64,000 nucleotides of DNA, taken from positions 124,001 to 188,000 of the forward strand of contig NW_026782172.1 of the NCBI RefSeq assembly GCF_031769215.1, written 5' to 3'. This document shows, one piece after another, positions 36,712 through 61,123 of the stretch. The number at the start of each line of letters is the position of its first letter. Within the stretch, counting starts at the first letter, position 1. Position numbers and translations under genes: made by a program. The DNA comes from Ylistrum balloti (Eukaryota). Below the pieces are notes generated by a model. That model ran no database searches and was not told the origin of the DNA. It saw only the letters and a list, made by a program, of their open reading frames with translations.

Positions 36712-36946
36712 TTAAAAAGGAAAAGTAGTCGTGGAGAATTCCTGGCATTCTTTCGGCATTCCTATCCAGGTCCCATACCCCTTGCGATGAAGAATTCCAT
36801 AGGTATCTTCCTTGCTGCTCTGATATCTTGTAGATGCTTTTTTAGTTTCCCAATAATTGCCTTTGACCATGTGCAGTAATTGGAAATATTTACAGACCTT
36901 TTTGTAGTGTTGAAGAAGCTGTAGTTTACATAATCTTGATTTTGTC
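36712..36946 (-). CDS. ADAR: ADAR-like exon 9 ([14 protein letters not shown]...[22 protein letters not shown])
   Basis: Acceptor atatttcag, phase 2, stop TAA at 36714-36712. Confidence 0.9.
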
Positions 36947-39900
36947 CTGAAATATCAGTGTCAAAAGTAGCACATCACTTCAAATGTAGCCTTTGTTTCA
37001 TCTTATAAAGAACAACACGACAATATCGACACAAGTTAGATATTTACTTAATGAAGAAAAGTAAAGTGAACATATTGTGCGTATAGAATACTAGAGAAAT
37101 AAAAGTCGGACTCCGATGTCAATTATTTACATCTATTTGTTTTGATTGTGTTGGTCATTCCTATAAAAAGTTTAATTGGAGTCTTCTGATTCCGATGTCA
37201 ATGTTTTACATCTATTTGTTTTGATTGTGAAGTGAGTAGTGAGTATTTCTACTGCTTTATGACAAGAACAAACTTAAAACAACAGGTTATATAAATATCA
37301 AATGCGGAATTTCGAAATAAAAGCCAAAAATATCTTACTTTGTTCCACTATATCCACCGCTGTGTGTTAGACCTGTGTTGCCGTTCGTCATTTCTGGTAT
37401 AATATCCGAGATGTTCCAGTTGATACTATAAGGAGTACATATCTTGATGCTTTGTCTAGGGTGATCCTTGCGAGATACAACACCAAGCAAGGGATGATTG
37501 ACTTTGTAACCATCTCGAAATGTTACGTTGTCATTCTCTAGTCTGCAGCACATCGCTCGCGCCATGTGTCCGTGATTGTAGAAAGTTCCTTTCAACCACA
37601 AGGAAATACATAGTTAAAGAATATATAACATTCATTCTTAAGATAAGAAACTACATAAAGGGAATGTACAGTCTTATCATATAACATCTATGGGAAATTT
37701 GTTTTGTGTGATATTAATCAATATTGTGACCATTCGATGTAAACTAAAACTCCAAAGGAACTCCTATTTTATAAGACAATACCAAATTACAGAATAAATA
37801 CTTAGCAGTCCATTTCAATGAAGACATGTTGTACATAATGACCAAAGGATAATATCGAGAATGAAAAACATATTGTCCTCTAGTCCTCATGATTATATCT
37901 TAAAATAAATGATAAGAGAGGACAATCGGGAATATGCACTGGAAAACATTCTGCTATCCAGAAAATGAAGGAAATCTCAGTTGTCGAAGAAATGAGCATT
38001 TTTTCGTATGTGTGTATGTGTATGTGTGTGTGTGTTTTTTTTCGGCGTTAACAGTCATGTTAATGAGGTATCTCTACCTATTGTAATGGAGCTGAAGTAT
38101 ACAGGCTTCATTAGACTGGCCAGTAGTGCCCCCTGCATTCCCAACATGTTCCACTTGCAAATCTTGTCACTGCAGGACATGACGAGCAGTCCCTCTCTGC
38201 CTCTCACTGCATCCATGGCCTGGCAATGGTGACTCACGTGCATCTTATTGGTCGGAATCTGTTCACCTTCAAGAAAAGGCAATTGTCTCTCATATCAACT
38301 TATGTGAAATAATTTTTTCGTAACAGGACCAAAAGCAGTTATAATTTTATAGCACAATATCCTAAATATTGCAATATACCAATCAACATCAGGGTAAAAA
38401 TCAGATAAAATAAAAACTTTTTACAATTGTTCCTATTGTCTTAATTAGGATGTCTTTAACTAGAAATAAGAATATCAGCATTCAATAAAAGTCTTAATTT
38501 GATTTTTTGTACTGATGTCATTTTATATAAAAAAGAGTTTTACAATTGTTAGATAATGTAAAGACATTTAATACAATGACGATGTTTGTCAACATGAAAC
38601 AATAATACAGAATGCTGTGTATTAGTCGGACCAGAATTTTTGTTAATAGGATTTTAGTATTCAAAGTCGTAAATTTGTCCCTCCACATTCACATAAAATG
38701 TATTTCGACAGTGAGGCAGTAAGGATGTGTTTGAGTGAGTTACCTTTCGTCCTCAGTCGCCCTTGTTTCTTACCGACAAATGACGGATTATGCTTTTTTA
38801 CATACAAACTGTCCGGCTCTTCTTCTGATTGGCCTGTACTGAATGTGCATGCATATATTATGAGGCAAATTCTTATTTGAGATACAAGTCAAATGATATT
38901 TTCACTATTCACTGTAAAGGCTATATTCATATAAACACAAAAATGTAAAGTTTATGAGACCCAGCAAATGATTTAAAATATGAAGAAAACAAACGTCAGA
39001 CGAAAATGATATGATTCGCATGTAATTACCTGCAGGTAAAAACTGCCCCATCACCACATGGCGCGGTTGATATGTACAGGTGAAACTTGATATCTGGAAC
39101 TACTTCTACCTTCCCCGCCTCATGTCGTTGGAGGACATAAGACTTTTCCCCTCTACTGAGTTTTGATAATTGGTCATAAAGAAACCTGTAAGTGTAAGTT
39201 TTGTAATTCAATAAAGCTATACAATAATATAATAGTAGATAGTAGCGAGCAGGCCCGGGCTTTTCTTACTTACCCGGGCTACTAAGGTATTACACCACCG
39301 TTAGGTCTGTTCTATACGTTTTTTTACTTACCCGGGCTACTAAGGTATTACACCACCGTTAGGTCTGTTCTACACGTTTTTTTACTTACCCGGGCTACTA
39401 AGGTATTACACCACCGTTAAGTCTGTTCTACACGTTTTTTTACTTACCCGGGCTACTAAGGTATTACACTGTTCTACACGTTTTTTTACTTACCCGGGCT
39501 ACTAAGTTATTACAACACGATTAGGTCTGTTCTACACGTTTTTTTACTTACCCGGGCTACTAAGGTATTACAACACCGTTAAGTCTGTTCTACACGTTTT
39601 TTTACTTACCCGGGCTACTAAGGTATTACAACACCGTTAAGTCTGTTCTACACGTTTTTTTACTTACCCGGGCTACTAAGTTATTACACCACCGCTAGGT
39701 CTGTTCTACACGTTTTTTTACTTACCCGGGCTACTAAGTTATTACAACACGATTAGGTCTGTTCTACACGTTTTTTTACTTACCCGGGCTACTAAGTTAT
39801 TACAACACGATTAGGTCTGTTCTACACGTTTTTTTACTTACCCGGGCTACTAAGGTATTACACTGTTCTACACGTTTTTTTACTTACCCGGGCTACTAAG

Positions 39901-42900
39901 GTATTACACTGTTCTACACGTTTTTTTACTTACCCGGGCTACTAAGTTATTACAACACGATTAGGTCTGTTTTACACTTTTTTTACTCACCCGGGCTACT
40001 AAGGTATTACAACACCGCTAGGTCTGTTCTATACGTTTTTTTACTTACCCGGGCTACTAATGTATTACACTGTTCTACACGTTTTTTTACTTACCCGGGC
40101 TACTAAGGTATTACAACACCGTTAGGTCTGTTCTACACGTTTTTTTACTTACCCGGGCTACTAAGGTATTACACTGTTCTACACGTTTTTTTACTTACCC
40201 GGGCTACTAAGGTTCTACACGTTTTTTACTTACCCTGGCTACTAAGTTATTACAACACGATTTTTTTTTACTTACCCGGGCTACTAACCCGGGCTACTAA
40301 CTGGTATTACAACACGATTAGGTCTGTTCTACACGTTTTTTTTACTTACCCGGGCTACTAAGGTATTACAACACGATTAGGTCTGTTCTACACGTTTTTT
40401 TTACTTACCCGGGCTACTAAGGTATTACAACACGATTAGGTCTGTTCTACACGTTTTTTTTACTTACCCGGGCTACTAAGTTATTACAACACGATTAGGT
40501 CTGTTCTACACGTTTTTTTTACTTACCCGGGCTACTAAGGTATTACAACACGATTAGGTCTGTTCTACACGGTTTTTTACTTACCCGGGCTACTACGTTA
40601 TTACACTATTCTATACGTAAAAGAAAGACATCATTAGAATTGTTAATGTTCGAACTGATTGAAAGTGGAGCAAATAATCGAAATTCATACAAAGGATAAC
40701 AAGGAAAACAGGATGATAAAAACTAGCGAATCGCACTAGTAGAGTGAGGTAAATGATGGGGAATTGATAAGAACAACTGGCCACCTGAAGAAATACAACT
40801 TGATAAGTTAAAACTAATATGGTTTGACAACAAGACTTCAACTTTTGGATACGTCAATTATGGAGGATAAATCAAACACCTGAGATTGTTAGGTGTGTTT
40901 AAAGAAAGAGTAATCGTCTATGAAAATGTATCCAAATAGACAAAAGATTGTAATACCACCGTCAACATTTCGAGATTGAACTATTACAAGATGGAAGTTT
41001 ACAGATGATGTTAATTTTATTCTAAGTGACAAATAAGAAAGCGGTTTTTTTTAGCTTACAAAATACTAGTTTAAATGGAAATGTAAGCATTGGATTTATA
41101 CTTATATTTATCAAAATACTGATGTCGGTAAATTACAGAACAACGGGAATTAACAGAAGATTGATATGGTGCCCCGTGTCATCAACATGCTTAAGGTATA
41201 TAATCCGACATTTCAGTTATTTTCATATAAAAGTAAGATTATACGTATATACGAAATTTATTTAAATATGGGACATGTGCATCTCCTCAGGTTGACTTTT
41301 ACATTTTTGCTTTTGATCACTTCTGATTTTCCAAAATCGCCTTCTGGGCTTCATGATTTTGACCATTAGCAACATTGACGATTCAAACAAGAAACAACAA
41401 CACAATACCACAACCTTAACAAAATCATAAACAATGGCAAAATGTATACAAAAGAAAGATTTACACAGAGACCCTTGAAAAATTACATGGAGAATAAGAC
41501 CAAATGTTCCGGAAGAGTAAGCGTCTCTGCACCATCGCTTACAATCGCCATGTAAACATTGTCCAATCCAAGAAAGTAATGTCGTGTTCTCAAGTGAGAA
41601 CAAGGTGTAAAATTTCAATGTCCCAATTGTGGGTCCTTGATATGAAGCGCTTATTAGACCACATCTGGAAGAGAAGGACCTATTGCACAAATATACACTT
41701 CGACATTAGCTGGGGATCATAAATGGCAGTATGAAAATTATAATAGAAATAGTTCCTTTTGAAAAAATAAACCTTGTCGTAATCCTTGCGGAATCTCTTT
41801 TTGTTTATCGAACGATGTGATACCAAGCGATACACTTAACGATACGATTGGTTAATGAGTTCTTGATTGAAAGTTTGCGTTGCCACCTTAAGCAGCGTTT
41901 GGAGGTCTATTTCTAGTAAACCATAATGCTTACGAGAATCACTGGTCTGTCAGTCAGCGAAAGAGTACAGAAAAAGAGGACAGACTTCTGAGTAGACACA
42001 CGTAAGGTTCTACATTCACCACTTCCACACATTCAGCAATGCCTACAGGCTCAGGGAACAGTGGAACATCAACGTTCAACTGACAATTGAACAATAGGCG
42101 ACATTGCTTCCGTCGACCAGTTAACGTCCTCTGTCGACTTGAAGGCGCAAACAAGCGAGATCGCAATGGGTACCTGATCGCCGGACATAGAAAATATCAG
42201 GTCTTAGCGAAGAGTCCACTGGTCTGTTTTTAACTTATTCCGACAAATAACAAGGTCCATATTTTGAGACCAAGAAATACGGTATAATATATGAATCACA
42301 TTCTGGGCACAACAGCACTGTTTTGGGATGCTTGTCTCTAATCTGTAAGCTTCGCCTGTTTAAATGGGCATACCGTGATCAGATCCTTCGACCTGCACTT
42401 GCCCAGCTTGTGATGCCCATCTATTGGGAGATTATAAGACTCTTTCATATGCGTGTATGTAGGATAGAGATATTCCACCCGAGGGTCACAAAATATGGTG
42501 AAACCCGAGGCTCTGCCGGAGTTACAAAATATGGTAAAACCCGAGGCAGAGCCTCGGGTTTCACCATATTTTGTGACCCTCGGGTGGAATATCTCTATCC
42601 TACATACACGCATATGAAAGAGTCTTTTTCTCTCATATCTTTACCAAAATTTTGGGAAAAGGACAGTCTGCCGGCCATTATCTTCATTTTTTTCATTTTT
42701 TTCATCCGAGGTTTTATAAAAAACGAACTGGATATTCTTAACGATCCTACCCATGTCAAATTTCAAACCATTTTTCTGTATATTGTAGGATGAATATATT
42801 ATTCGTAGATGAAAAAAAAAAAAAAAAAATGATCTCTGTGTGATTATATAGTATGTGTAAGTAAACATCCGCGAAAAGAAATTGTTCCGTCAAATACTTC

Positions 42901-45900
42901 AAAGAAATAAACATGGAACGGTTTTTTATAATTCAACATTTGATCATTTTAAGAAATATATCAATGTATCTTTTTACTGTTTTTACATTTTTTCAAAATA
43001 CTGTGACTCTGACGTAACATCACAATAGTCAAAGGAATACCATTCATAAATTCAAGGCGTGACGTCACACGATCTCCGATTCCGAGACGCTGTCGCTCTC
43101 GATCACCATGATTCGACGACGTTTGGGTGGTGGAACATTTGTGGTGATATTTACGGTGATTTGGCAATTTTCAATGTGAGAACCAACAAACAAGGATTCG
43201 ATACGAGTTTCAGATTGTTTCTGTGATACAGGATTGTAGGTGTTAACCGTATTTTCTTGTTGTGATGACGATGGTAAGCACACTGTGACATCAGATGTTG
43301 GCCTAGTAACTGTTGAATTTGATGAAATGGTGGCAGAGGATGGTGTTCGGTTTGATGGAATTTATTCGGAGTTTTTTTGTGTTTGACAACATATTGGAAA
43401 ACATGTATTTCTGTCTGTCATTCAGTGCTCTGTAATTATTCAGCGACTGTGTGACATAAACCTGCAATGTATCGGGTACATGGTTGTCGGTCATTTTTTG
43501 TACAAGGGATTTTCGGACGCTGTAAGAATTGTCTCCCCTGAACACAGATTACTCCGCGCACGTGTTTGCCCATGTAAGATAGAATTTTCTTACATAGCTA
43601 TCTTACATGGGCAAACTCTATCCAATATGGCGGGATATGAGAGAAAAGTATATGCTAATGGATGACCATGCTAAAGCGAGTCCGACATGTGCATGACTAT
43701 TTTCAACAAAAATTGAAAGAGACTCTCCCATAGCCTGCAACTCACCAAACATGAACCGATTTGAGCATTTGGGTGTATATCTAGTTTCTGCTTCTGGTTA
43801 ATGGTTACCAGAAGTGTGGTGGCTTTTTCAGTTATTGATCATTGTCTTACCAAATAGAACTTGTTGATTAGTCATAAGTAAATACCTGGACTGCCTTATC
43901 ATGAGACGTTATGCAGTAACGTAAATTTCTAACGAACTGTGTTTAAAGTTGTTCTGAATACCACCTTCTCATTCCTCGTGACGCTAAGATCTCAGCGTGC
44001 GAATCCATCAGCGCTTGTCCGTCTGTTCTCAGGTTTCCTTTTCTGATAGAGCGGTTCCCTTCAAAACAAATTAAATTGCGATGCATATCGTGAGACGGCC
44101 AAACTGATTAAATACCCGGATCATTCTCGATGAATCATATAAAACTACCGCTAGAGAATTTCAGACGAAAAATGAACGAAATGCCTTTCCATATCTACAG
44201 TATCTACATGATGTTTTCTAATCGTATGTTTACCCTTGTAATTACGTAATCACCAGACCAGTTTAAAAACATAACAATGATAATGATAGTCAGTACATTC
44301 GTGAGTAATGCAGGTTCTAACTGAACAAAAGTTTCAGCATAAGAATTCCAAACACTGTCAGAAATACAAGAATATAAATGTCTATTACGTGATTTATCAA
44401 AGAATGAAACTTAGTATGATGCTACCTACATTTAGCAGTCCTTTTCAGATACCAGTTGCATACAATATTTATCCTTTAATAACTAAATGTGACGCTTTTC
44501 AACGGAGAGAAAATTAATTTGTTTTGGAATGTGAAATTAAATAAAAAGACTTGTATTCTAAATCTTATCTAGAAAATAAAGCTACATATACCTGTATCCT
44601 GATAATCGGGACCTATGTCTATGATAAATTTTCAACAACCTGACAAAGACACTAATCTGAAACTTGTTTTTCATATAAGTTGCCTTTTGCAATGGATCGA
44701 AAACAGATGTCATGGTATTTTATGATCATAAATCTGTTACCCCTAAACATTTCCGGTCTTCTGAGTAGATTGTTTGAAGCGACGTCATTTTAAGTATCAA
44801 TGTATTCTTCTACTTTTAATAGGTGATGTAACGATGGAAATAAAAAGAAGAAAAAACATGTCAGCTTGTTGTAAGTTACAATCAATCCCCAAAAATGATT
44901 TAGGAGTTTAAACAAGGCTCCATGGTATTATCGTACACCCTATCATCTCGTAGGCTCATTCATTAAAAAGGTCTGACAAGCTTTCATTACGATCTATTAT
45001 AAGAACATTATAATAATAGTAATTCTGGACGCAGGCTTTTAAAGCCTATATATATCCAGATCTGAGTTATCAAGTTTCCCGAAGAAGAATAAGTTTGTTT
45101 TTGTCTATTTCATGATTGTAAATGCAATCGGAATTACTCCAATGTATATCCAATCGGAATTCAAATGTTTTGACTGTTGGTGACGTGACAACGACATCAG
45201 GAAGGGAGTTCCGGAAGTTAACCATCCGCTCACTGAAGGAGTACTTTCTCAAATTCAGTCTGCTTCTCCTTTTTAATAAAGAAAGACTGTGTCCTCGTGT
45301 TATTTTGTTAATGTTCGGGACCAGTTAACCCTCAGAGACAGCACTATCATATCCTCAATTGTTAGCTTGTATACTTGGATCATGTCTCCTCTCAATCTTC
45401 TGTGCCTCAATGATGGTAATTTAAGGATCCTCAGTCTGTTTTCATAGCTTAGGTCTTTCATTCTCGGTATTTGTTTCGTTGCTCTCCTTTGTACATTTTC
45501 CAACTCATTTATATCTTTTTGCATACAGGGATTCCATACACAGGCCCCATATTCCAGGTGCAGACGTAAAAGCGCTTTATATAATAAACAAAATGTTTTG
45601 TTGTCTAAATATGTGTACGTTCTTCGGATAGTTCCCATTATTCTATTTGCTTTGTTGACTGTAAAACAGTTGACCTTCCGTTGACGAAGCCGTATTGGTG
45701 CTTACTTAACAAATCATTATTTTCTAGATGGGTCATTATTCTTGCCCTGACGATTTTCTCCAATGCTTTACTTAGTACACTTGTTAAACTAACTGGCCTG
45801 TAGTTTCCTGGTGCCTTCGTATCCCCCTTTTTGTGTATGGCAGTTATCTGACCCTCCTTCCAGCTTTCGGGAAGTTCTCCAGATCTTAGAGAAGAGTTAA

Positions 45901-48900
45901 AGATATCACATAAGGGTGTTTTTAGTATATCAGCGGTTTCTTTAAGTACTTTGGATGAATATTTTGTTGGGTTCAATTATTTTAAAATGTTATATACTTG
46001 CAGTTCTGATATTTCAGTTTTGACGCACGGAATGTTTACGGTAAAATTGTTCAGAACTGGGATGTGGCCTTGCGGTTCAACAGTAAATTCACTCGAGAAA
46101 AAATCTGCCAATGCATTCGCCTTCTCCTTATCATTTTGAGCAACAACGGTTTCGTTTCCACGCTTGATGTGCAGATCCGGAATTCCAGATCTCGTTTTTG
46201 TTTTGGAGCTTGTATATCTTCAAAACTTCTTTGGATTTGTTTTTACTGTCTGTGCAATCTCCTGCTCCAAAATTCTTTTACATTTCCTTACTAAAGCCTT
46301 TACTTTATTTCTAACGCGGACATATTCTCTGTATTTCACACTTTCTCTTGTTTCAATGTATCTCTGCCAGCTCCTGTGTTTCCGTTTAATCGCCTTTACA
46401 GTTTGGTCATCTAGAGGATACTGTCTTTTGTTTGGTTCTCCAATGCGTCTAGGTATATGAAAAATCGCAAAAATATAGTACCGTGATCACATTTACCTAG
46501 TCCGATTCGTATTTCAATATTACTTATCATATCTTGTTCGTTTGAAAACAACAAATCTAAAATACTAGTCTCGTTATTCGCCCTTATTCTGGTTGGATTT
46601 TTGATATGCTGAAACAAATACAAAGTCTTTCACCGCTTCTAGAAATTTATATTCGTTATCCATTGGTGCCAGTCTATATTTTTAAAATTGAAGTCCCCCA
46701 TTATTAATAAATGGGATGTTTTTATTTCCCCTACATTGCTAAGAAGCGTACATAAATTAATATTATTTTCATCTGCGCTGTTAGGACTCCTGTAGAGACA
46801 TCCGATTATTAAGGCATTTCCTTTATCCAAATTGATTTTTATCCACAACTGCTCGTCAAACTTTCTCATAACTGATATTTCCGTAGGTCTTAGATTTTGT
46901 GCCGTGTATATGACGATTCCTCTCGAACCTTGGTCTTGTTTTATTTCCACTTCTATACATAATTCAGACTTGTTTATTTGGTACCTAGAGTTTTTAGGGA
47001 AAGCCTCGACTATTCCAACAATATCCAACCTCTCCTGTTTAATGATAGCTTTTAGTCCTTCAGTTTTGTTTGTAAGTGTGTCCGCGATTGTAAACATACA
47101 TCGGAGTTTATCGGCGCGTTTTATTCAGCATTTTTCACTGCCAGCCGTACGATCTTCCTGTTCCACGGCGGACCCCGTACCCGGTGTACGTATTCCCCCG
47201 TACGATCTTCCTGTTCCACGGCGGACCCCGTACCCGGTGTACGTATTCCCCAGACTCGTTCCTTTCTCTTGATTTTGCCTCCTCTCTTAAGGTAGTTTCA
47301 TCTTCCCGTTCCTTTTTAGTAAGATCGTTGCTGATCCAGATGCTGCTATATTTCTCATTGCCCTTAAGAGCAGATATATTCCTAAACAGAATTTTCTTTT
47401 TCTCTGGTGATGAAAAAGAAACCAAGATTGGCCTAAATTTGTTCTTGGATTTATCGTACTTGCCAAGTCTTATTACTTTTGCAACATTGTCCTCATATTT
47501 AACTTTGCATGTCTCTAACATCTCCCGTATTTCCTTCTCATCTGCCATTTTCCTTGCCTTTCCATCGGTATCGTTCTGTTCCTTTATGCCGAATACAACA
47601 ATGTTAGATTCCCTTGTTTTCCTCTCGTTGAGTTCTGAGATCACATCTTGCTGTGTATCTTTATCAGCAGTATTGTGCTTGGCATGCACAGATTTTCCAT
47701 CCGCTTCTTTCTTACCTCTTGTATGATGATTTCCTTAACCTGTTCCTCCTTACACTTGCTCTGTATAAGTTTCTCCAGAGATTTGATTCTTTCCTCGAAC
47801 ATCTCCGTGCACATTTTTGCTCGATTTGTATATCCGTTTGGAAATTCTTCTCCACGGTCGTAAGACAAGGAGGACAAAACCACATAGAGTCTGCTGATTT
47901 TGTAAATACGGCGTGCTTATTTTCATCCTTATTTACACATTTATTGCAGTATTGAAGGCTACATCTACGACACTTCAACGCTTTTGTTTTCGAGTCCGGT
48001 ATAACTGAGCAAACCCTGCAGCAATCTCCATCCCACGGAAGAGAGAATGGGTTTCCGGTGGCCGCTTTAGCTCCAGTCCTGCTAGAGGATCTTGTCGCGC
48101 GGGCCGCTGTGTCCTTATCCTGTTGTTTGTTTACGTCGCCATGTTTGCCGGCTAGTTGCGGCATGTTGATTTCGGCGTGTGTTGGCAATTTCATTGCTTC
48201 GAATCTAGTGAAATTTTAACCGTTGGTCGGTAGTGCCTATTGGCACGTCCCTGCCAATTTTGACTGGAATCTGTCCTTGTTTAAAGCGTTACTTTTTAAT
48301 ATTATACTCAGTGCCAAGCGGAGCTCGAGACAATCACGTCCGTTGCCATTGATGACGTCACAAAATCATATAGAAGAAACTAATCTATGTTTAGTATAAC
48401 ATTTTTCATTGTGAAATAGACAAGTTTATCTATCAAAACCAAGCATTCTGCAAACCGGAAGTATGATGAGATAACAAAGTATTTCCGGGTATAGAAATTA
48501 ATCACGAAAACGATTCCGGATATGGCTCACTTGAAAAGCCATCATTGCTTCACCATAAAGCCATGAACATGAAGGAACAAGTTTTATCATTCTGAGATAG
48601 TTAATTACACGCAGAATACATATGAATTGGTGATGTTGTCCCAAATAATGCCAGTAAATTTTTGTCCGAACATAGCACTTGTCATAAACAAGAGATTTAT
48701 ACACGAAAGTATACGTGTAATTGTGTAAAGTATTTATTTAACATTCGAACGATATGATTCAATTAAATGGATTGAATATTGAAATAACAAATAATATACA
48801 ATGGTCTGGGATACATACCAGAAGCTAGGCTGATGATTTCAAAAGTCCTGGTAATTGTAGATTCCATGACAATGCCTGCTATCACTACAGGGCCGTCAAG

Positions 48901-50731
48901 GTTTACGGATATGTCGGCTATTAAACTGTCAAACTTCTCATGACAAAGCTTTGCCATTTTATCATGGAACGTCAGTGACCCGCTTATCATGCACTACAAT
49001 AAAAGCAAGTATAGATGTCTCATATGCTGCCACAGAATTGCCTCCCTTTAAATCTGTCATGCCGGCAGTAGGGATTATATATTTTATAATACAGATGCTG
49101 CTACATTTGAGATACAATCTGTTTCAAAGCAATTATTATTTCTCTTGCTGTTTCATATTCTTGTTTTTTTATGATGTACTTTTTCGGTGTATTTCAGCTT
49201 TTGGCACTGTGACAATGGTGACGGATGCTATTCTTTGATCAAGACATACTCCATCTTTAACGTCGTGTATTGTGTAAGTATAACGACTGTTTTGTCGTTT
49301 GTCAGTGACAAGGTGGGGTGTCCTGCATTTGGTTCAGTTTTTACAGCTCGATGTGGTAGCACTACACAGGCTTACATGAACATATTCCAGCCTTCCGAAA
49401 GCGCACGCACTGACATTGTGACCATAAATATAAATAGTTTCTTAAGATCAATGTCAGTGTTCGAAGATTACTCTCGGCACGCAGATAACAAACATTAAAC
49501 ATAAAGTAAGCCATTAAATGATGAAACTATAAAACTATCAGTAATACAATTATCAATGAAAGAATACCGTCGAAAACCTTGATCCACAGCCGAAAAGTTT
49601 GTTCCGTTCTAACTCCTTCCATGCTTTTCGAGACGCTTCTTGTTTTGCCTCATTGATCGAAATGCCCGATGCCCATTCAAAGTGCATATTTGCTAGCACT
49701 GCACGGACAGCAAAGCTACCAATATACAAAACAAATAATTTACATGAAGGGCGTTTCCGGTGATATGAACACATGCCGGATCGCCTTTACTTACTCGCTG
49801 TATTTCCCGTATAAATATTTCTTTTGATCTTATTTTTGCCTTATTTTCATCAAATTTGGTTTTCAATTATAATTGTGTTGACATGTCGATATTTATTTTT
49901 GTTGTTGTAGTTTTTTTCCAATAAATGCAATACTTGAATTACATCTTGGGAATAATATGCTTAATTTTGATACATATACATGTAATTAGCTCATGAATTT
50001 TGGTTTTAACATGAGACAGTTTTATATAACGTGAGTCTAAATGTGTTGTAATTTTTGGAATCAACAAAAAAATTGTTCCCAGCGGTCTTTCATACCATCT
50101 TAACCAATCAAAACGCGCCTTTCAACTATTGCTGATGTAGAATTTCGGCCTATATTCCACTTCAGTAGTCGACAGATTCGGGTGAGGATGTAGGTCGAGG
50201 CAAATGAAAAGGCTTTAAACATTTCTCTTTTTGGATAATATGTTTAAATTATTGTTTTATTAATTCCGTGCGTACATACCCAGAATTTGTCATGTCTAGC
50301 TATGAATAGTAAATATATCTCTTTACTAGCAAAGACCGAGAAAGTAACGGATATCTTTGAGATGCATCACTGTACTTTCCGATTTACATATTTGATGACA
50401 TATTTGAGCTTTTCGTAATAATTTGATGTCGATCATTTCCTTCAACATTACAATTTACCGTCATCTTCGGGCTTAGCGTCAGACTTTAGGCTTGTATCGA
50501 GAATTTAAGCATAGCAATTATACGTAATTGATATAACCATTATTTAACATAAAACAATTGCTATGAACTCATGTATCAAAAGACACATTTTGTAATGTTT
50601 TTAACTTACATGCTTTCATGATCTGTTCCAGCTACAGAAAATAGTAGTTGTAAACCTCTTTCCTGTGCAAAGTTGTTCAGAATACCGATTGGGCTGGCCC
50701 TATCAGCACGTACAGTAGCACTCATTGCCAT
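36712..50731 (-). CDS. ADAR: ADAR1-like dsRNA adenosine deaminase with a single dsRBD, 487 aa; complement(join(50731..50610,49715..49568,48993..48819,44058..43965,39185..39030,38838..38744,38266..38078,37588..37339,36946..36712))
   Basis: All introns are GT-AG, phases match, and 1464 nt end in TAA. Motifs: [75 protein letters not shown] and RAxCCR are ADAR1-type rather than ADAR2-type. Additional 5' exons cannot be excluded. Confidence 0.9.
37339..37588 (-). CDS. ADAR: ADAR-like exon 8 ([15 protein letters not shown]...VNHP...SINW)
   Basis: Acceptor ttgaaag, donor gtaaga, phase 1/2. Confidence 0.92.
38078..38266 (-). CDS. ADAR: ADAR-like exon 7 (EQIPT...[20 protein letters not shown]...SSITI)
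   Basis: Acceptor ccttttcttgaag, donor gtagag, phase 1/1. Confidence 0.9.
38744..38838 (-). CDS. ADAR: ADAR-like exon 6 ([31 protein letters not shown])
   Basis: Acceptor cacattcag, donor gtaact, phase 2/1. Confidence 0.88.
39030..39185 (-). CDS. ADAR: ADAR-like exon 5 (FLYDQL...[18 protein letters not shown])
   Basis: Acceptor acttacag, donor gtaatt, phase 2/2. Confidence 0.93.
39262..40610. repeat. Minisatellite, 25 units of about 45-59 bp (ttttttacttacccgggctactaaggtattacaccaccgttaggtctgttctacacg)
   Basis: 25 (ac)ttacccggg-type cores counted. Confidence 0.95.
41440..41720 (-). mobile_element. Terminal fragment of the Penelope-like dispersed family
   Basis: ccggaagagtaagcgtct...cgccatgtaaac...gagaacaagg matches the 19389 and 22726 copies. 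Confidence 0.45.
42436..42626. repeat. Perfect 82-bp inverted repeat with a 27-nt spacer
   Basis: Arms 42436-42517 and 42545-42626, checked base by base as exact reverse complements. Confidence 0.97.
42436..43616 (-). mobile_element. Crypton-like (tyrosine recombinase) transposon relic bounded by two palindromes
   Basis: Minus relic [19 protein letters not shown]...[13 protein letters not shown]...SNMLS resembles the Crypton/DUF3504 catalytic end (NHSxRK...GH...NNY) with the GH segment deleted. [14 protein letters not shown] tail follows. A second perfect 19-bp IR lies at 43564-43582/43598-43616. Confidence 0.55.
43965..44058 (-). CDS. ADAR: ADAR-like exon 4 ([30 protein letters not shown]), catalytic HAE
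   Basis: Acceptor tttgttttgaag, donor gtggta, phase 1/2. Not in the ORF track. Confidence 0.92.
45010..48350 (-). mobile_element. CR1-group LINE, near full length but with the RT core deleted; in ADAR intron 3, same orientation as the gene
   Basis: ORF1 has a PHD finger (47712-48194) and an [11 protein letters not shown]...RLGK...RPILV region (47135-47689). ORF2 has APE (CLYRSP, MGDFN), RT N-terminus ([13 protein letters not shown]) and C-terminus ([16 protein letters not shown]). Confidence 0.9.
45070..47097 (-). pseudogene. CR1 ORF2 (APE-RT), frameshifted and internally deleted
   Basis: Fragments in several frames. STVLQ joins directly to VNKANRIMG at about 45655, so there is no YADD region. 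Confidence 0.85.
48819..48993 (-). CDS. ADAR: ADAR-like exon 3 ([21 protein letters not shown]...VIAGIVM...IISLAS)
   Basis: Acceptor cttttattgtag, donor gtatgt, phase 0/1; start of the deaminase domain. Confidence 0.92.
49568..49715 (-). CDS. ADAR: ADAR-like exon 2 (dsRBD C-half: [35 protein letters not shown])
   Basis: Acceptor tattggtag, donor gtattc, phase 2/0. Confidence 0.85.
50610..50731 (-). CDS. ADAR: ADAR-like first visible coding exon ([40 protein letters not shown])
   Basis: dsRBD helix 1 pattern [10 protein letters not shown], donor gtaagt, phase 2. In-frame TAG at 50755-50753 may be a stop or an acceptor. Confidence 0.8.
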
Positions 50732-51626
50732 CAATGCTAACGAAGGTAAGGGCTATACAAGTCCAAATATTGTATCTCAGTAGCTCCCTCTCCAGGTTCC
50801 TGTTAATGTCCATAAAACACGAACATATATATACAAGGATTGGTCAGATGATATTATCCTATTCAGTACAAATATCATTTTAAGTATATTCAGGGCAAAT
50901 ATTTTTTTTTTTTTAATTTTTTATTTTCTTTAAAACAAATGCACATCCCCATCCCCTCAAGTTTTTTTATAGACTTTTGAAAAAGGAATAAAATCTTCAG
51001 CGAGTGTTATTTGTAACCTTTGACAAATAATAATGAAAGGGATACCATATACAACAAGTATGAATGTGTATGACCTGTTTCTACCACCAGCTATTCCGAC
51101 CTGTAATGCACCAACATATATTTTGTACACGAAATCAGTGTGGGTGCATTTCTTTTACCTAAAGCGAAAATTAAAGTTTTATGCAGAAATATTGCTATAA
51201 ACGTGTAGTACAAACGTTTGTTTATACAACTTCTTAGAAATTGAAAAACGTCCATCTATAATTGTAGAAACCTTCATAATTGATATTCCACACATAAAGA
51301 CAATATAACAAGGTTAACAACTGCCAAATATATACTACTACATGTATTTGAGATTTTAATGACCGAGAGGTTACCCTGTCCACAATAGGCACAACAAGTA
51401 CAAACAGTCAATATTCTATTCTGACTGGGTATGGTTACAGTTCTGAGCAGCTTTTTACAAAAAAAACTTACGATTTTGTTCCGTTTCACGAAAAAAATTA
51501 TCGTAACTTTACGAGTGCTTGACCCCTATCGTAAGTTTCATCGTAAGTGTAAAACTTTGTCGTAAGTGTAAAACTTTGTCGTAAGTGTAAAACTTTGAAA
51601 AATTGTCGTAAGAAAAGCAAACAAAC

Positions 51627-53248
51627 ATGGCTGCGGCATTAGTATTATTATTTGAGAATGACAGAGCGATGCGACGAGAGAGAGTTTTTCGCGATAGGTT
51701 GAACATTCTAGGTACTCTTACTGACGGCGAATTGATAGCAAGGTATCGATTTCCGAGGACAAGTATCCTGGATTCTGTTTGTTCAGCTTTTTGTTATAAA
51801 CTTGACAACATCAAATGATGATCTGAACAGAGTCAAAGATGGATTTTATAAAATAACCAGCTTCCCTAATGTTGTGGGGTCCATTGATGGTACGCTGATA
51901 CCTATCCAAGGAATGTCTGGGGAAGAAGAACCAAACTTCATCTGCCGTAAAGGATTCCCAGCTATCAATGTGCAGGGAGTTGTGAATGCCAATCTTCGGT
52001 AAGTTGTTTTTTGGTCACCTGAGATGAAATCACCTTATGTCCAGTGTCCGACTGTTGTGCATCATAAACTTTCTACATTTTACACTTCTTCTCAAAAAAC
52101 ATTGCACCAATTTTGATTAAATATTACAAAAACCTTCCTTAGGCAAAGGTCCACCAAAATTGGGAATTATATGCTCCTCATCCCACAGATATTCAGTAGT
52201 GGGGACTAAAGGGGTAAAGTTTGACCATACATGAATCTAATTTAGTAATACACTGTGTTAAATTTAGTACTTTTTTACAGTTTTACCAACATTGTGGTTA
52301 GGTGGCCTTTAGCAACCCATGACGCTTTCATTTTATCAAACTCTGGTCTACCAAATATAATGGAAAACATGAATGGTTGGCTCTTGGGAGACTCAGGGTA
52401 TTCTTTAAAAAGATGGTTGTTGACTCCATTTGGTGCCCCAGGGAATCCACAGGAAGAGAGATACAACAAAGCTCACTGCTCTACTAGGAACACTATGGAG
52501 AGAGCCTTTGGAGTGCTTAAGAGCAGGTTCAGGTATATTCAGGATAAGAAATACAATTCTATGGAATAAATTATGCAAAAAAATAATGGTTAAGTGTCAG
52601 GGAGCTAATGTCGTGGTGCGGCATCTGTCCAACTTTTCCATTCAAATGATTTCTTCTCAATCACCTAAAGATATTGGGTGTGTGTTACAGTAAGCATTAT
52701 AAAGGTTTACCAAGTTTGCTCAAATGAATGACCTTCGCCCACTTTCAAGGTCACATAGGTCAAATATGTATGAAATCTTAAAAACTTTGATAACAGAGTG
52801 AAGTTTATCCAGTACATTCAAGTTACTCTACACTCTTAACAAAAATGTTTCCTTTTGAGCTTACCGTAATTAAAAGTGCAGATGAGCGATACAGACCCAT
52901 TGAGCCTCTTTTCCTTTGTGTCCTTTATTGCTTTGAAGAATGTTCAGCTGTACAATGACTTTAAACTTCTTTAAAGCAAGATAGCATTAAATGATTCACC
53001 AGAAGTCATACTTTTCATACCCGTATGAAATTGATATTTTTTTTACAGGAGGATGCCTGCAATTTAAGCCAGCAAAGAGCATCAGGATCATTGAGTGCTG
53101 CTTTAGACTGCACAATAAAGCCATCAACGAAAGAATCCATTTGGGTGCAGATGAGCCAGTAGTACACCTGTACAACAACAACATTGCATACCAAAGAAGG
53201 GAAAATGATGGGTTAACAACACGACAAAGACTTCTTCAGAGATTTTGA
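51627..53248 (+). pseudogene. Harbinger (HARBI1-like) DDE transposase pseudogene, exons about 51627-51998, 52281-52532, 53049-53248
   Basis: RERVFRDR, RYRF, IDGT, RKGF, LGDSGY, ERAFGVLKSRFR, LHN. The HTH region between TSIL and DSVC is deleted and there is a frameshift near 51815. Confidence 0.88.
52590..52910 (-). mobile_element. Degenerate HINE-like insertion in Harbinger intron 2
   Basis: gatgagcgatacagacccattgagcctctt end motif and tgacct...tcaaggtca core. Confidence 0.4.
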
Positions 53249-53409
53249 AGAATATCTGCCAAAGTTGAAAGTCAAAGTTTAAAACAAATGATTTTTTTGT
53301 TTGTGTTTTTATTTTATTATCAGTTGATACTCCTATTAAATTGGATAGCCATATAAAACAAGAGCTGTTGCACAATGGAGAATAACTCCATCAAAAAGGG
53401 ATGAATCTG

Positions 53410-56400
53410 AATGTGAAGTTACAGATTTCTCTGCTGATGATAACCCAACCGCTGCTTCGGTTAGGCACTGATGACATGGAGCTCTGGAGCCTTCTGTTGT
53501 CAGCATCGTCAGGTGGATTCCAACCATCATCGGCCGTTTCGACCCCTATTCCACGACGTCCTCTGGTTGGCGGGTCAGCAGTGGTGATCATTCACTGCTT
53601 GCTGTTGTCTGGGCTCCAGTTTGGCTCATCTCGTCTACACCAAAGCCAGCATGATGATCTCTCAGCCCTTTCAGCCAAGGTCTTAATAGCTGCTTTCCTC
53701 TTTGCTCCTGTCAGTCCCAATTTCTGGAACATCCTCCATACTGACTGTGCAGGGAATCCTCTGGCACCGACCTCTACTGGAAACAGCCATGTGTTCCATC
53801 CCTTATGTCTGCACAGCTCTGCAAGCTCTTGGTATTTGCCAGCTTTCTTCTCATGTGCCTCATCACACCCTTCTTCCCATGGAACCGTCAGCTCCACCAA
53901 GATGACCTTCTGGCGCTGTTGTGACCATATCACAATGTCTGGTCTCAGAGTGGTTTGCACTAAATCAGGAAAGACGAGACGCCTGTTGAGGTCTACTCCC
54001 AGGATGGTGCTTGGCTGAGTACATTCACATGATATGCAGTAGTAGTTGGTGGTCCCTTCTCTCCAGCTCTCACAAACTGTATGTGAGGTTTACGAGGTTC
54101 TATCAGTGACCTCTTATGACGCCGCTCCTTTTCCAGAATATCTGCTAGGGCAGCTAGAACCTGGTCATGACGCCATCTGTACCGTCCCTGCTGGAGGGCT
54201 ACTCTACAGCCTGATAGGATATGTGCAATTGTGCCTCTTCCACCGCACAAGGAACAAGCTGGATCTTCCAGAAGACCCCACCTACACAAGTTGCTTGGCA
54301 GTGTGTCATACACAGACCTGAGCATGAAGGATATCCTGAGAGGTTCCATTTTCCACAAGTCTGTCCATGGAATCTTGCGTTCCGGAAGATTCCACCGCGT
54401 CCATGATCCTTGCTGTCCTAACTCAACTGCTCTACTTTTGCGTTGCTGTTCCTCCTCTGATCTCACCACAGATACAATTCTGTCTCTCTTTTCCTTTCCT
54501 TCTGCTATGCTCCACTGCTGGAAGTGATCGACTCCCAATCCTCGTCTACAAACACAGATGTTTCCCACGATGTCTTGTAACTCCAGCGTATTTTCAGCTT
54601 TGCTAACTGTAGCACCAGCTGACCATTTCCGGCCTGTCCTTGTGACCACTCCAGCTTTCTGTACCTTGATGTCTTTGGAGTCCTTCAGGGTCATAACCAA
54701 TCTACACTTGGCCACCTTGAATTCTTCCACCATGGAGGACAATGGTTACTGCAGCTGAGATGTCTTGATGTACAGGCCAACTGCCGTGAAACTAGGTGGT
54801 ACTCCCAGCCATGATCGTAACTTCCTGCTGGTACATCTCTCCAAGGTTTCAACTGTTGTCAGTAGTAGCTCATACAGAATCAGGTTCCAAGACAGTCTAG
54901 GAAGAACACCATGTTGATATAACCAAGCCTTGAATTTCCCTGGTAGTCCTGACTTGTCGATCCTCTTCAGCCATTCAGTTACTTGCTCCTCCACCTTTCT
55001 CACATTCTTCTTGTCAGACAGGGTGTCGTCGTACCATCTCCCTCGACATTTCACTGGGTTGTCAATGATTGATAGTATCTCCTCCCCCTGGACCCGAAGG
55101 ATGAACTGCTTTGACAACCGGCCATTCTTGATGATCATACACCGGGATTTCTTCGGTTTAAATCTCATACGGGCCCAGTTGACCACTTCGTCTAGTGCCG
55201 ACAGTGTCCAACGTGCCTGAACATTGGTTGTTGTTGTGATCGTCAGGTCATCCATAAACCCTCTGTTTGATGGTTGATCAATTCCTGAGTTCATTTTCGG
55301 CCCTCTAGTCTCTCTCTCAGCAGCTTTCATGATGATGTTCATTCCCATCACAAACAGGATAGGTGATACTGTGCATCCGGTCACTATTCCCTTCTCCAAG
55401 TCCTGCCAGGTTGTGGTGAAGTTGTTTGTGGTAAACCTAAGCTGCATACCATCAATATATTTCTTCAGGATACTGATGACATGTTCTGGGATGTGATAGT
55501 GATGCAAAGCTACCTCAATCAGCTTGTGGGGGATACCTCCATAGGCATTTGCCAAGTCAAGCCAAACCACTGTCAAGTCGCTCTTGTCAGCCTTTGCCTC
55601 GCGAATCATCTGACTCAGAACGCTGGTGTGTTCTACTCATCCCGAGAAACCAGGTATCGCTCCCTTCTGGGCTGACGTGTCGATGTAATGATTGCTTAAC
55701 ATGTAATCTGTTAGCCGCCTTGCCATCACAGAGAAGAAGATCTTACATTCAACACTGAGCAAGGAGATGGTTCTAAACTGCTCTACTGATGTCAAATCCT
55801 TCTCTTTTGGAACAAAACAACCTTCTGCTCGCTTCCATTTGTCAGGAACTGATCCTTTCTTCCATATTCCTTTCAGGAGCATCCACAATCGTCTCAATAA
55901 CTTGGGGCACTTCTTATACACACCATATGTCAGTCCACTTGAGCCAGGTGCTGACTTCGATCTCGCTTTCCTAACTACTTCCTGCACCTCCTTCCACGAG
56001 GGTTCTCCCACTTTAAATGGGGTACTTGGTGGATCCTCTTCTATATCCCTTGGGCAGTCTCCTAATAGTGTTGCTCTCTCTTCGTCACAGTGCGTATTCC
56101 GCAGATGATGTTCTGTCTCTGTCTTTGAGCTTTCCAGTTGGCCTGAGTGCTCTTCTCCCAACAGGTCTTTCGTAAATTTGAAAGGATCCTTGACAAACTG
56201 TGCTCTTTTCCTAGCCCTGGTCTTCCTGCCAGCCCGTAGTCTTTCAGCCTTTCTTAGCCTCCTAAGTTTATTCCTGGTAGTATCTCTTAGCTGCTGGATT
56301 CCCATCCTTTCTTCCTCTGGGGCTCTTCTAAATCTACGCTTAAGCGTATTCAGTTCCCTCCTCAAACTTCTTATTTCTCCTTCTCTTCTGTTCTGTTTGT

Positions 56401-60744: not shown

Positions 60745-61123
60745 CATGATATGCAGTAGTAGTTGGTGGTCCCTTCTCTCCAGCTCTCACAAACTGTATG
60801 TGAGGTTTACGAGGTTCTATCAGTGACCTCTTATGACGCCGCTCCTTTTCCAGAATATCTGCTAGGGCAGCTAGAACCTGGTCATGACGCCATCTGTACC
60901 GTCCCTGCTGGAGGGCTACTCTACAGCCTGATAGGATATGTGCAAGTGTGCCTCTTCCACCGCACAAGGAACAAGCTGGATCTTCCAGAAGACCCCACCT
61001 ACACAAGTTGCTTGGAGTTGGCAGTGTGTCATACACAGACCTGAGCATGAAGGATATCCTGAGAGGTTCCATTTTCCACAAGTCTGTCCATGTAATCTTG
61101 CGTTCCGGAAGATTCCATCGCGT
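60745..61123 (-). mobile_element. Second HERO-like copy, 5'-truncated part beyond the hAT insertion
   Basis: Matches about 54028-54396. It retains LPTPSNLC where copy 1 has LPSNLC. Confidence 0.9.

What the first reader, a model, noticed from the sequence alone, without database searches (positions are those of the whole stretch)
36712..50731. Minimal ADAR1-type enzyme: one dsRBD, no Z-alpha, intact catalytic core
Seen: 487 aa with a single dsRBD almost directly joined to the deaminase. HAE, PCG, SCSDK and RTK are intact, as are the equivalents of the ADAR1 second Zn site (FHLY His, CC, NHP His). Known: ADAR1 normally has Z-alpha domains and several dsRBDs, single-dsRBD ADAD proteins in vertebrates lack catalytic residues, and ADAR1 expansions are reported in bivalves. 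Inference: a divergent paralogue with possibly distinct substrates, such as viral or TE RNA.
Basis: partly seen in the sequence, partly recalled or inferred. Interest (0 to 1): 0.75.

Follow-up and report, generated by a model that had tools for sequence, protein, structure and literature searches.

The report
Truncated fast-evolving scallop ADAR1 duplicate
This saucer-scallop gene is a shortened, fast-changing extra copy of an RNA-editing enzyme gene that keeps its metal-binding centre but has lost the loop that flips the target base out, so it is more likely a weakened or inactive offshoot than a streamlined enzyme.

Summary
The 487-aa, 9-exon minus-strand reading frame (50731..36712) is real. 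Residues 51-487 are identical to an NCBI protein of Ylistrum balloti (437 aa, 'dsRNA-specific adenosine deaminase-like'), so the locus is already annotated. Exon 1, which completes the dsRBD, is not in that model, and no RNA data were available.

The gene lies in the ADAR1 clade, in the bivalve-only subclade that holds the virus-induced oyster ADAR1v. All scored members have several dsRBDs and no Z-alpha. A canonical Z-alpha ADAR1 lies elsewhere in this genome.

It is the Hv-channel-adjacent member of a scallop tandem cluster and sister to a 757-aa, 3-dsRBD paralogue (dS 0.44). Its exons 1-9 match that gene's exons 5-13. Its exon 1 is a former internal exon whose phase-0 acceptor is kept. No further dsRBD exons occur in the 13 kb upstream, which is full of transposons.

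HAE, PCG, SCSDK, RTK and the second zinc site are intact, though the fourth ligand is the His of KKHNPSF, not FHLY. The GEG base-flipping loop is cut by four residues and the R510-equivalent arginine is lost. Its branch is 3.7 times longer than its sister's (omega about 0.45 versus 0.17).

Verdict: a truncated, relaxed duplicate, probably editing-weak or inactive. Interest is modest.

The parts
50610..50731 (-). Coding exon 1 as read from the ATG (aa 1-40; first half of the only dsRBD). It is homologous to internal exon 5 of paralogue P0152.
   Evidence: tblastn of P0152 residues 244-292 aligns to 50752-50615. Profile HMM hit of 24 bits. Not included in NCBI model P0157.
50732..50754 (-). Kept ancestral acceptor (AG at 50754-50753) plus 21 nt of open frame (PLPSLAL) upstream of the ATG. 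The exon could still be spliced to an upstream exon in phase 0.
   Evidence: Sequence read. Exons 1-4 of P0152 sum to 729 nt, which gives phase 0. Homology starts exactly at 50752.
49568..49715 (-). Exon 2 (148 nt, the same length as P0152 exon 6). It holds the second half of the dsRBD. NCBI's start codon M51 lies at 49687.
   Evidence: HMM hit of 37 bits.
48819..48993 (-). Exon 3 (175 nt, equal to P0152 exon 7). Linker and start of the deaminase domain. Contains GPVVIAG, where relatives have GRKVIAG.
43965..44058 (-). Exon 4 (94 nt). Holds the HAE motif: zinc ligand H169 and catalytic E171.
39030..39185 (-). Exon 5 (156 nt). Holds FHLY and PCGDG (zinc ligand C224).
38744..38838 (-). Exon 6 (95 nt; the sister's is 104 nt). 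Holds KKHNPSF, whose H248 aligns with the loop His of human ADAR1 'SRHYPVF' (second-zinc ligand H988 by my numbering), and RTK. A 9-nt deletion at its 3' end removes the three codons that encode IEQ in the sister.
   Evidence: Read contig record 5 spans it without gaps.
38078..38266 (-). Exon 7 (189 nt; the sister's is 192 nt). A 3-nt deletion removes the second Gly of GEG. Holds REGLLV (R510-equivalent lost) and SCSDK (zinc ligand C295). 94% identical to the sister's exon, including 26 nt of intron.
37339..37588 (-). Exon 8 (250 nt). Holds MCCR and VNHP, the remaining ligands of the ADAR1-type second zinc site.
36712..36946 (-). Exon 9 (235 nt, including the stop). C-terminal part of the deaminase domain with GYGTW.
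44900..48215 (-). Retrotransposon (endonuclease and reverse-transcriptase ORF fragments) inserted in intron 3.
   Evidence: ORF translations. Approximate limits; not searched against family libraries.
50755..64000 (.). 13.2 kb upstream of exon 1, filled with transposon ORFs: DDE_Tnp_4 at about 51.6-53.2 kb (+), a retroelement at 53.4-57.8 kb (-), and a hAT/zf-BED element at 57.8-60.2 kb (+). No ADAR-related exon is present.
   Evidence: gene calls, tblastn, profile HMM.

Best explanation
Origin. This is the Hv-channel-adjacent member of a scallop (Pectinidae) tandem cluster of ADAR1v-type genes, the bivalve-specific ADAR1 subclade with several dsRBDs and no Z-alpha. It arose by duplication of, or was later homogenised by gene conversion with, the neighbouring 3-dsRBD gene of Ylistrum balloti (P0152).

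Structure. Only the equivalents of that gene's exons 5-13 are present in the sequence I could see. The product is therefore at most the last dsRBD plus the deaminase domain: 487 aa, or 437 aa in NCBI's model.

What is shown. The frame has been kept open by selection, but constraint is relaxed. The catalytic zinc site, the catalytic Glu, the RTK lysine and the ADAR1-type second zinc site are retained. Two in-frame deletions have removed four residues of the GEG base-flipping loop. The arginine that holds the orphan-strand phosphate (ADAR2 R510) is gone. The dsRBD has also lost conserved residues.

What is inferred. The protein can still fold and may bind dsRNA weakly. It is a poor or inactive editor, either a decaying duplicate or an ADAR3/ADR-1-like non-editing derivative, and not a streamlined active enzyme.
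For: Gene model and identity with NCBI protein.

Synteny. In P. maximus the order is PWWP, ADAR, ADAR (P0150), short ADAR (P0258), Hv channel. In Y. balloti it is PWWP, P0152 at a contig end, then this gene, then Hv.

Exon-for-exon match, with homology starting at the conserved phase-0 acceptor.

Tree: sister to P0152 at 100/100; scallop cluster 100/100; ADAR1v subclade 100/97; ADAR1 clade 100/100. The subclade is tied to Rosani's ADAR1v.

Divergence: dS 0.44 to P0152 against 1.2-1.7 to P. maximus genes.

Selection:
- End branch 0.35 against 0.095 for the sister.
- Polarised changes are 38 N / 25 S (omega 0.45, p=0.0018 against neutrality) versus 10 N / 17 S (omega 0.17) in the sister.
- Only 0.5% of simulated neutral copies (25 of 5,000) keep the frame open at 0.1 substitutions per site.
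- All indels are in frame.

Functional residues. The flipping-loop deletions sit at unchanged splice sites and are confirmed in read contigs. Eleven of 74 near-invariant positions are changed, against 0 in the sister. The roles of GEG and R510, and ADAR3's Q549, are from PMC11120146. The dsRBD scores 27 bits against 44 bits for the sister's dsRBD3.
Against: - No RNA evidence of any kind. Only one run, not on record as RNA, holds the locus.
- Upstream exons could lie in the 7.7 kb of contig beyond the window or in the gap to the next contig. The kept acceptor is compatible with that.
- Loss of activity is inferred from sequence alone. Gly-Glu is still present in the shortened loop, and an Arg sits two residues upstream of the lost one, so some activity or a changed specificity cannot be excluded.
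- An omega of 0.45 could also reflect a mix of purifying and positive selection.
Confidence: 0.55

Rival explanations
1. The gene is full length (3 dsRBDs). Its first four exons lie beyond the window or contig end, behind a transposon-swollen intron. On this reading the 'minimal' architecture is an artefact of the window and a fragmented assembly.
For: Exon 1 keeps the ancestral phase-0 acceptor and an open frame up to it. The contig ends only about 21 kb upstream of exon 1. Introns of 4.7-4.8 kb with TE insertions exist in this gene, and one of 15.8 kb exists in an A. irradians member. The P. maximus Hv-adjacent copy still has dsRBD1 exon homologues upstream.
Against: No dsRBD or linker exon is found in 13.2 kb by tblastn or by a family profile HMM; nothing scores above 2 bits. 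The same intron is 430 bp in the sister and 357 bp in P0150. NCBI's model has no such exons. Keeping two acceptor bases and seven codons open is not unlikely by chance.
Confidence: 0.22
2. It is an unexpressed relic: a promoter-less partial duplicate that has recently begun to decay and makes no protein.
For: No 5' exons or promoter region were identified. Evolution is accelerated and invariant residues are lost. All three exonic differences between the read contigs and the assembly are non-synonymous: C377W, Q432K, and G466E in the conserved GYGTW. No RNA run holds the exons.
Against: The 487-codon frame is intact, with eight canonical introns and only in-frame indels, after about 0.2 substitutions per site on its branch. 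Neutral simulation leaves 0.5% of frames open at 0.1 per site (25 of 5,000) and none of 5,000 at 0.15 or 0.22. The N/S ratio is significantly below neutral.
Confidence: 0.15
3. One reading: an active, streamlined ADAR1-type editor with its own substrate range, for example viral or TE dsRNA.
For: Both zinc sites, the catalytic Glu and RTK are intact. It belongs to the subclade of the virus-induced oyster ADAR1v. The frame is under purifying selection. Isolated ADAR deaminase domains can edit (PMC11120146).
Against: The GEG loop is shortened by four residues and the R510-equivalent is lost. R510Q/A lowers the ADAR2 rate about tenfold, and Q at this site is one of the five positions whose change restores activity to ADAR3. 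The K preceding the V351-equivalent and two conserved dsRBD residues are also changed. No expression data exist.
Confidence: 0.08

Closest known systems
Ylistrum balloti paralogue P0152 (NCBI 'double-stranded RNA-specific adenosine deaminase-like', 757 aa)
   Same: Same species and same cluster. Sister in the tree at 100/100. 67% identical in protein. Exon lengths match (148/175/94/156 nt) and splice sites are the same. Same ADAR1-type second zinc site.
   Different: P0152 has four more 5' exons encoding dsRBD1 and dsRBD2, an intact GEG loop, the R510-equivalent, and no departures at the 74 near-invariant sites. Its branch is 3.7 times shorter.
Oyster ADAR1v (C. gigas EKC29721; Rosani et al. 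2019, PMC6651903)
   Same: Same bivalve-specific ADAR1 subclade (100/97; identifiers mapped). No Z-alpha.
   Different: ADAR1v-type proteins have 3 dsRBDs (P0165 and P0176). Oyster ADAR1v is shown to be induced by OsHV-1; nothing is known of this gene's expression. The scallop cluster sits on a long stem (0.9) and is tandemly multiplied.
Canonical ADAR1 (human p150/p110; Y. balloti P0285, 1161 aa)
   Same: Deaminase domain of ADAR1 type. Best PDB match is human ADAR1 9b83 at 248 bits. The four residues aligning with the second-zinc ligands are conserved. P0285 also has one dsRBD.
   Different: No Z-alpha. About 35% identity to non-scallop canonical ADAR1s (34-37%). Flipping loop shortened. R1032 (the ADAR2 R510 equivalent) is lost.
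Editing-inactive ADAR relatives that keep the catalytic motifs (vertebrate ADAR3; C. elegans ADR-1)
   Same: Zinc ligands and the catalytic Glu are kept while RNA-engaging residues are changed. ADAR3 has Q at the R510 position.
   Different: Independent origin inside the ADAR1 clade. Inactivity here is only inferred. ADAR3 keeps the full-length flipping loop.
C. elegans ADR-2 (one dsRBD plus deaminase, 495 aa; PDB 8zen)
   Same: Similar size and one-dsRBD architecture. It was a hit in the PDB search.
   Different: A much weaker match (141 bits, against 248 for human ADAR1). From my own knowledge, ADR-2 is an active editor that needs the partner ADBP-1.

Membership tests
ADAR family (dsRBD + A_deamin editase) | Adenosine-deaminase (editase) domain, Pfam PF02137 | tested here: met
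   P0157 (identical to residues 51-487) scores 274.5 bits over profile positions 1-327 of 329. Exon-wise hits.
ADAR family (dsRBD + A_deamin editase) | Catalytic zinc ligands and proton-shuttle Glu (H..E, PCG Cys, SCSDK Cys) | tested here: met
   H169/E171, C224 and C295 are present and align to human ADAR1 and ADAR2.
ADAR family (dsRBD + A_deamin editase) | At least one dsRBD | tested here: inconclusive
   dsrm scores 27.3 bits (cutoff 23) only if exon 1 is part of the mRNA. NCBI's model starts inside the domain, and Pfam finds no dsrm in it. The sister's dsRBD3 scores 43.8 bits.
ADAR family (dsRBD + A_deamin editase) | Base-flipping loop Gly-Glu-Gly (ADAR2 487-489) | tested here: not met
   RTK-IEQ-GEG-QIP in the sister and all long paralogues becomes RTK-GE-QIP here, through 9-nt and 3-nt deletions. 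Confirmed in read contigs. Loop definition from PMC11120146.
ADAR family (dsRBD + A_deamin editase) | Arginine contacting the orphan-strand phosphate (ADAR2 R510 / ADAR1 R1032) | tested here: not met
   The column holds R in at least 93% of 46 ADARs and G here: REGLLV against GERLLV.
ADAR family (dsRBD + A_deamin editase) | A-to-I editing activity on dsRNA | not testable with these tools
   Needs an enzyme assay.
ADAR1 clade | Deaminase domain groups with ADAR1, not ADAR2 | tested here: met
   All 43 non-outgroup rows are separated from four ADAR2-type rows at 100/100. The PDB search gives ADAR1 248 bits and ADAR2 192 bits. ADAD and ADAT1 were not in the tree.
ADAR1 clade | Second zinc site (H988, C1081, C1082, H1103 of human ADAR1) | tested here: met
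   H248, C340, C341 and H358 align with the loop His of 'SRHYPVF', the CC of 'AICCR' and the His of 'VNHP' in 9b83. Ligand set from PMC7550611; the human residue numbers for these motifs are from memory. Metal binding itself was not tested.
ADAR1 clade | Z-alpha domain(s) | tested here: not met
   None in the window. Also absent from every ADAR1v-subclade member scored.
Bivalve ADAR1v subclade | Phylogenetic placement with oyster ADAR1v-type proteins | tested here: met
   The 20-row clade has 100/97 support. P0176 is C. virginica LOC111130123, and the CgADAR1v peptide occurs in P0165.
Bivalve ADAR1v subclade | Several dsRBDs (three or four where all stretches are counted) | tested here: not met
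   Only the dsRBD3 equivalent is present in the available sequence.
Bivalve ADAR1v subclade | Induction by virus or dsRNA | not testable with these tools
   No RNA run of this species was available.
ADAD (testis-type, catalytically dead) | Loss of catalytic Glu or zinc ligands | tested here: not met
   All are retained, so it is not an ADAD.

The most novel reading that the evidence does not exclude
Scallop ADAR1v clusters may repeatedly spin off shortened copies whose base-flipping triad is altered. The triad is GE- here, SEG in P. maximus P0258 and M. yessoensis P0264, and ATG in A. irradians P0260, while every long copy keeps GEG. If these copies are expressed, they would be independently evolved non-editing dsRNA binders. 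They could then compete with or tune the antiviral editor next door, as an invertebrate counterpart of ADAR3 or ADR-1 arising inside an immune gene cluster.
Probability: 0.2. Interest if true: 0.55.

Novelty: new member of a known kind. Interest (0 to 1): 0.3.

Why it matters
The protein is already in NCBI as an ADAR-like prediction, and the bivalve ADAR1v lineage is published, so the gene itself is not a discovery.

What I did not find in the literature searched is the following. In scallops this virus-linked ADAR1 lineage is a tandem cluster of 2 to 4 or more genes between a PWWP-domain gene and the Hv channel gene. The cluster shows signs of gene conversion. It also contains fast-evolving, shortened copies whose base-flipping loops are altered.

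If those copies are expressed, they offer a natural experiment on what the GEG loop and the R510 contact contribute to editing. They would also be a possible example of an immune-related editor giving rise to non-editing regulators. For annotation, the finding warns that 'all catalytic motifs present' does not mean an ADAR is active.

Tried and rejected
- RNA evidence. The look-up of sequencing runs (kind rna) returned a single run not on record as RNA, so expression, the 5' end and splicing could not be tested. The one read-laying run was used on that run. It confirms the DNA sequence of exons 5-9 only.
- An alternative exon 2/3 junction (model B, 480 aa) was rejected, because NCBI's protein matches model A exactly.
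- I suspected that the shortened flipping loop was a mis-chosen acceptor. This was rejected: the donor and acceptor are the same as in the sister gene, and the loss is due to 9-nt and 3-nt deletions in the exons.
- A PDB search with exon 6 alone gave nothing. The alignment of the whole of P0157 was used instead.
- The look-up of encoding contigs had no record for P0156 or P0002.
- The M. yessoensis locus (P0264) is a 50-kb model that is probably chimeric, so it was of no use for synteny.
- The 7.7 kb of contig beyond the window could not be fetched with any tool.
P0157 (residues 51-487) stood in for it. No structure prediction was run, since the tool returns no coordinates from which the loop could be judged.
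- ADAD and ADAT1 sequences were not included in the tree.
Full report
**1. What is in the sequence**

On the minus strand, nine open segments with canonical GT-AG borders join into 1,464 nt.

The exons are 50731-50610, 49715-49568, 48993-48819, 44058-43965, 39185-39030, 38838-38744, 38266-38078, 37588-37339 and 36946-36712.

Pfam finds one dsRBD across exons 1+2 (27.3 bits, cutoff 23). It finds the editase domain on six of the seven remaining exon pieces; the exon 3 and exon 6 pieces gave no hit on their own.

Residues 51-487 are 100% identical to P0157, an NCBI protein named 'double-stranded RNA-specific adenosine deaminase-like [Ylistrum balloti]'. The window is therefore saucer-scallop DNA: GCA_031769215.1, contig JAUZWB010000200.1, with window coordinate equal to record coordinate minus 124,000. 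NCBI's model uses the same eight downstream exons but starts at M51 inside exon 2. It lacks exon 1, and with it the first half of the dsRBD.

**2. Family placement**

The best solved relative is human ADAR1 (9b83, 248 bits), ahead of ADAR2 (192 bits).

I built a tree of 47 deaminase domains (IQ-TREE, LG+C20). It gives:
- all 43 non-outgroup rows (ADAR1-type) separated from an ADAR2-type outgroup (100/100);
- within it, a bivalve-only subclade (100/97);
- within that, a clade of 11 scallop proteins on a long stem (100/100).

The bivalve subclade is the one Rosani et al. 2019 called the second bivalve ADAR1 lineage. Its oyster member ADAR1v (EKC29721) is induced by OsHV-1 (PMC6651903). I tied it to my tree as follows:
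- Their C. virginica LOC111130123 is my P0176.
- The CgADAR1v peptide occurs in P0165.
- Their M. yessoensis PYT14984 is P0158.

Members I scored with Pfam have several dsRBD stretches and no Z-alpha.

The canonical ADAR1 of Y. balloti lies elsewhere. It is P0285, 1161 aa, with two Z-alpha stretches, one dsRBD and the deaminase domain.

So 'no Z-alpha' is a property of the whole subclade, and 'one dsRBD' is not unusual for an invertebrate ADAR1.

**3. Genomic context**

In Pecten maximus the order on chromosome LR736846.1 is:
- a PWWP-domain gene;
- an ADAR split into two gene models (281 aa with dsrm, plus P0153);
- P0150 (760 aa, 3 dsRBDs);
- P0258 (506 aa);
- an Ion_trans gene, the Hv channel, on the other strand.

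In Y. balloti the same Hv gene lies just downstream of our gene. The PWWP gene and the 757-aa paralogue P0152 sit at the very end of another contig, pointing outward. The two contigs probably abut.

A. irradians has at least four cluster members.

The literature searches I ran did not turn up a description of this cluster. Rosani et al. counted only four ADARs in M. yessoensis.

**4. Origin of the single-dsRBD architecture**

Exact spliced alignment of the annotated proteins to their loci shows that our exons 1-9 correspond to P0152 exons 5-13. The next four exons have identical lengths (148, 175, 94, 156 nt).

- P0152 exons 1-4 sum to 729 nt, so its exon 5 starts in phase 0.
- tblastn aligns P0152 from residue 244, the first codon of exon 5, to window 50752. 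That is the first base after an AG at 50754-50753.
- Our exon 1 is thus a former internal exon. Its acceptor and frame are kept, and the ATG lies seven codons in.
- Upstream, the 13.2 kb inside the window carry only transposon ORFs.
- Neither tblastn with ten relatives' N-termini nor a profile HMM of the cluster's N-terminal region finds anything but exons 1 and 2.
- Only 7.7 kb of contig remain beyond the window, and I could not read them.

The P. maximus positional counterpart P0258 is shortened in a different way. It keeps dsRBD2, has unannotated dsRBD1 exon homologues upstream, and has no dsRBD3 exons.

**5. Age and mode of evolution**

- Our gene is sister to P0152 (100/100). P0258 is sister to P0150 (92/92).
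- dS is 0.44 between the Y. balloti pair and 0.28 between the P. maximus pair. Between species it is 1.2-1.7.
- Either the short copies arose separately in each lineage, or old copies are homogenised by gene conversion.
- Two observations favour some conversion. dS is uneven along the gene, 0.24-0.29 in exons 4-7 against 0.58-0.87 at the ends. One exon is 94% identical to the sister's, including 26 nt of intron.
- Our end branch is 0.35, against 0.095 for the sister.
- I polarised single-nucleotide changes with three P. maximus outgroups. The counts are 38 non-synonymous and 25 synonymous on our branch (omega about 0.45, p=0.0018 against neutrality). On the sister's branch they are 10 and 17 (omega about 0.17). 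The contrast between the two branches has a Fisher p of 0.064.
- Only 0.5% of simulated neutral copies keep the frame open at 0.1 substitutions per site. All indels relative to the sister are in frame.

The frame has therefore been under selection for most of its history, but that selection is clearly relaxed.

**6. The 'intact catalytic core'**

Intact:
- H169/E171, C224 and C295;
- RTK;
- the ADAR1-type second zinc site.

The ligands of that second site in human ADAR1 are H988, C1081, C1082 and H1103 (PMC7550611). The CC of 'AICCR' and the His of 'VNHP' pair with C340/C341 and H358. Matching those motifs to the residue numbers H988, C1081/C1082 and H1103 rests on my memory of the human sequence.

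Not intact:
- The base-flipping loop is Gly-Glu-Gly at ADAR2 487-489 (PMC11120146). It reads RTK-IEQ-GEG-QIP in the sister and in all long paralogues, and RTK-GE-QIP here.
- The cause is a 9-nt deletion at the end of exon 6 and a 3-nt deletion at the start of exon 7. Donor and acceptor are unchanged.
- A contig from an independent read set spans both sites without gaps.
- The arginine equivalent to ADAR2 R510 / ADAR1 R1032 is replaced: REGLLV instead of GERLLV. R510Q/A lowers the ADAR2 rate about tenfold, and Q at this position is one of five residues whose change restores activity to ADAR3.
- In all, 11 of 74 positions that are at least 93% conserved among 46 other ADARs are changed here. The sister has none changed, and the canonical ADAR1s have 0-1.
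- The dsRBD has a 3-residue deletion. It has also lost two residues conserved in its paralogues: NEY to NNF in helix 1, and KEAK to NEAK before helix 2. It scores 27 bits against 44 for the sister's dsRBD3.
- The read contigs differ from the assembly at three exonic sites. All three are non-synonymous: C377W, Q432K, and G466E in the conserved GYGTW. The numbers are too small to weigh heavily.

**7. Reading**

Most likely (0.55): a 5'-truncated, relaxed tandem duplicate of an ADAR1v-type gene. Its product, if made, folds like an ADAR1 deaminase domain with one weak dsRBD but flips and holds its substrate poorly. It would then be an editing-weak or editing-dead derivative.

Rivals:
- The gene is full length, with exons beyond the contig end (0.22).
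- It is an unexpressed relic (0.15).

Shown here: the gene model, identity with the NCBI protein, the phylogeny, the synteny, the exon homology, the deletions and the substitution counts.

Inferred: expression, the true 5' end, and loss of activity.

**8. Novelty and score**

This is a new member of a known kind. The lineage (bivalve ADAR1v) is published and the protein is already predicted. I did not find the scallop tandem cluster and its shortened copies with altered flipping loops described in the papers searched.

Other derived copies also alter the triad. It is SEG in P0258 and P0264 and ATG in P0260, while all long copies keep GEG. This allows the more interesting possibility of recurrent non-editing offshoots (probability about 0.2).

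Interest is 0.3.

Another note of this scan on the same window (s1-238067) had already flagged the four-residue shortening of the loop. I confirm it at the DNA level.

Noticed in passing
window 38071-38292 versus L002 28381-28605: Exon 7 (SCSDK exon) plus 26 nt of the preceding intron is 94% identical to the sister gene's exon 11, while other exons are 74-88% identical. dS is 0.24-0.29 in exons 4-7 against 0.58-0.87 at the gene's ends. This suggests gene conversion between the two Y. balloti copies.
   Followed up: partly
window 32858-32970 and 31890-31999; L004 23306-23373; L002 32491-32605; L005 21761-21862: Sequence at the 3' end of the Hv channel gene (its last coding exon and nearby) has partial copies a few kb downstream of the internal ADAR copies in both P. 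maximus and Y. balloti. The duplicated unit seems to have included part of the Hv 3' end.
   Followed up: partly
L005 8702-8836, 9228-9371 and 9788-10186 (P. maximus): Homologues of the dsRBD1 exons and linker lie unannotated just upstream of the annotated start of P0258 (506 aa). No dsRBD3 exons exist between its exons 2 and 3. The P. maximus Hv-adjacent copy is therefore shortened differently from the Y. balloti one.
   Followed up: partly
L003 7874-14053 (P. maximus): One ADAR of the cluster is split into two adjacent gene models on the same strand: a 281-aa dsrm protein and the 415-aa deaminase P0153. This is probably a single gene.
   Followed up: no
L007 (M. yessoensis NEDP02076735.1): The model for P0264 spans 50 kb and nests a separate 213-aa A_deamin gene. 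It is probably a chimeric prediction across two cluster members.
   Followed up: no
window 36779, 36882, 37437: Read contigs of run X1 differ from the assembly at three exonic sites. All three are non-synonymous: G466E in the conserved GYGTW, Q432K and C377W. Five differences fall in the surrounding introns.
   Followed up: partly
window 53394-54089 and 57160-57774 (minus strand): Two near-identical coding segments of about 0.6-0.7 kb flank a retroelement with reverse-transcriptase ORFs (54.7-56.4 kb). A related fragment lies at 60.7-61.2 kb. A hAT/zf-BED transposase ORF of 566 aa lies at 58537-60234 (+), and a DDE_Tnp_4 gene at about 51.6-53.2 kb (+).
   Followed up: no
window 44900-48215 (minus strand): A retrotransposon with endonuclease and reverse-transcriptase ORF fragments sits in intron 3 of the ADAR gene, in the same orientation as the gene.
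   Followed up: no
alignment (P0258, P0264, P0260): The derived or short cluster members of other scallops also alter the flipping triad. P. maximus P0258 and M. yessoensis P0264 share SEG and a D-to-N change. A. irradians P0260 has ATG and KMK instead of RTK. All long copies keep GEG.
   Followed up: partly
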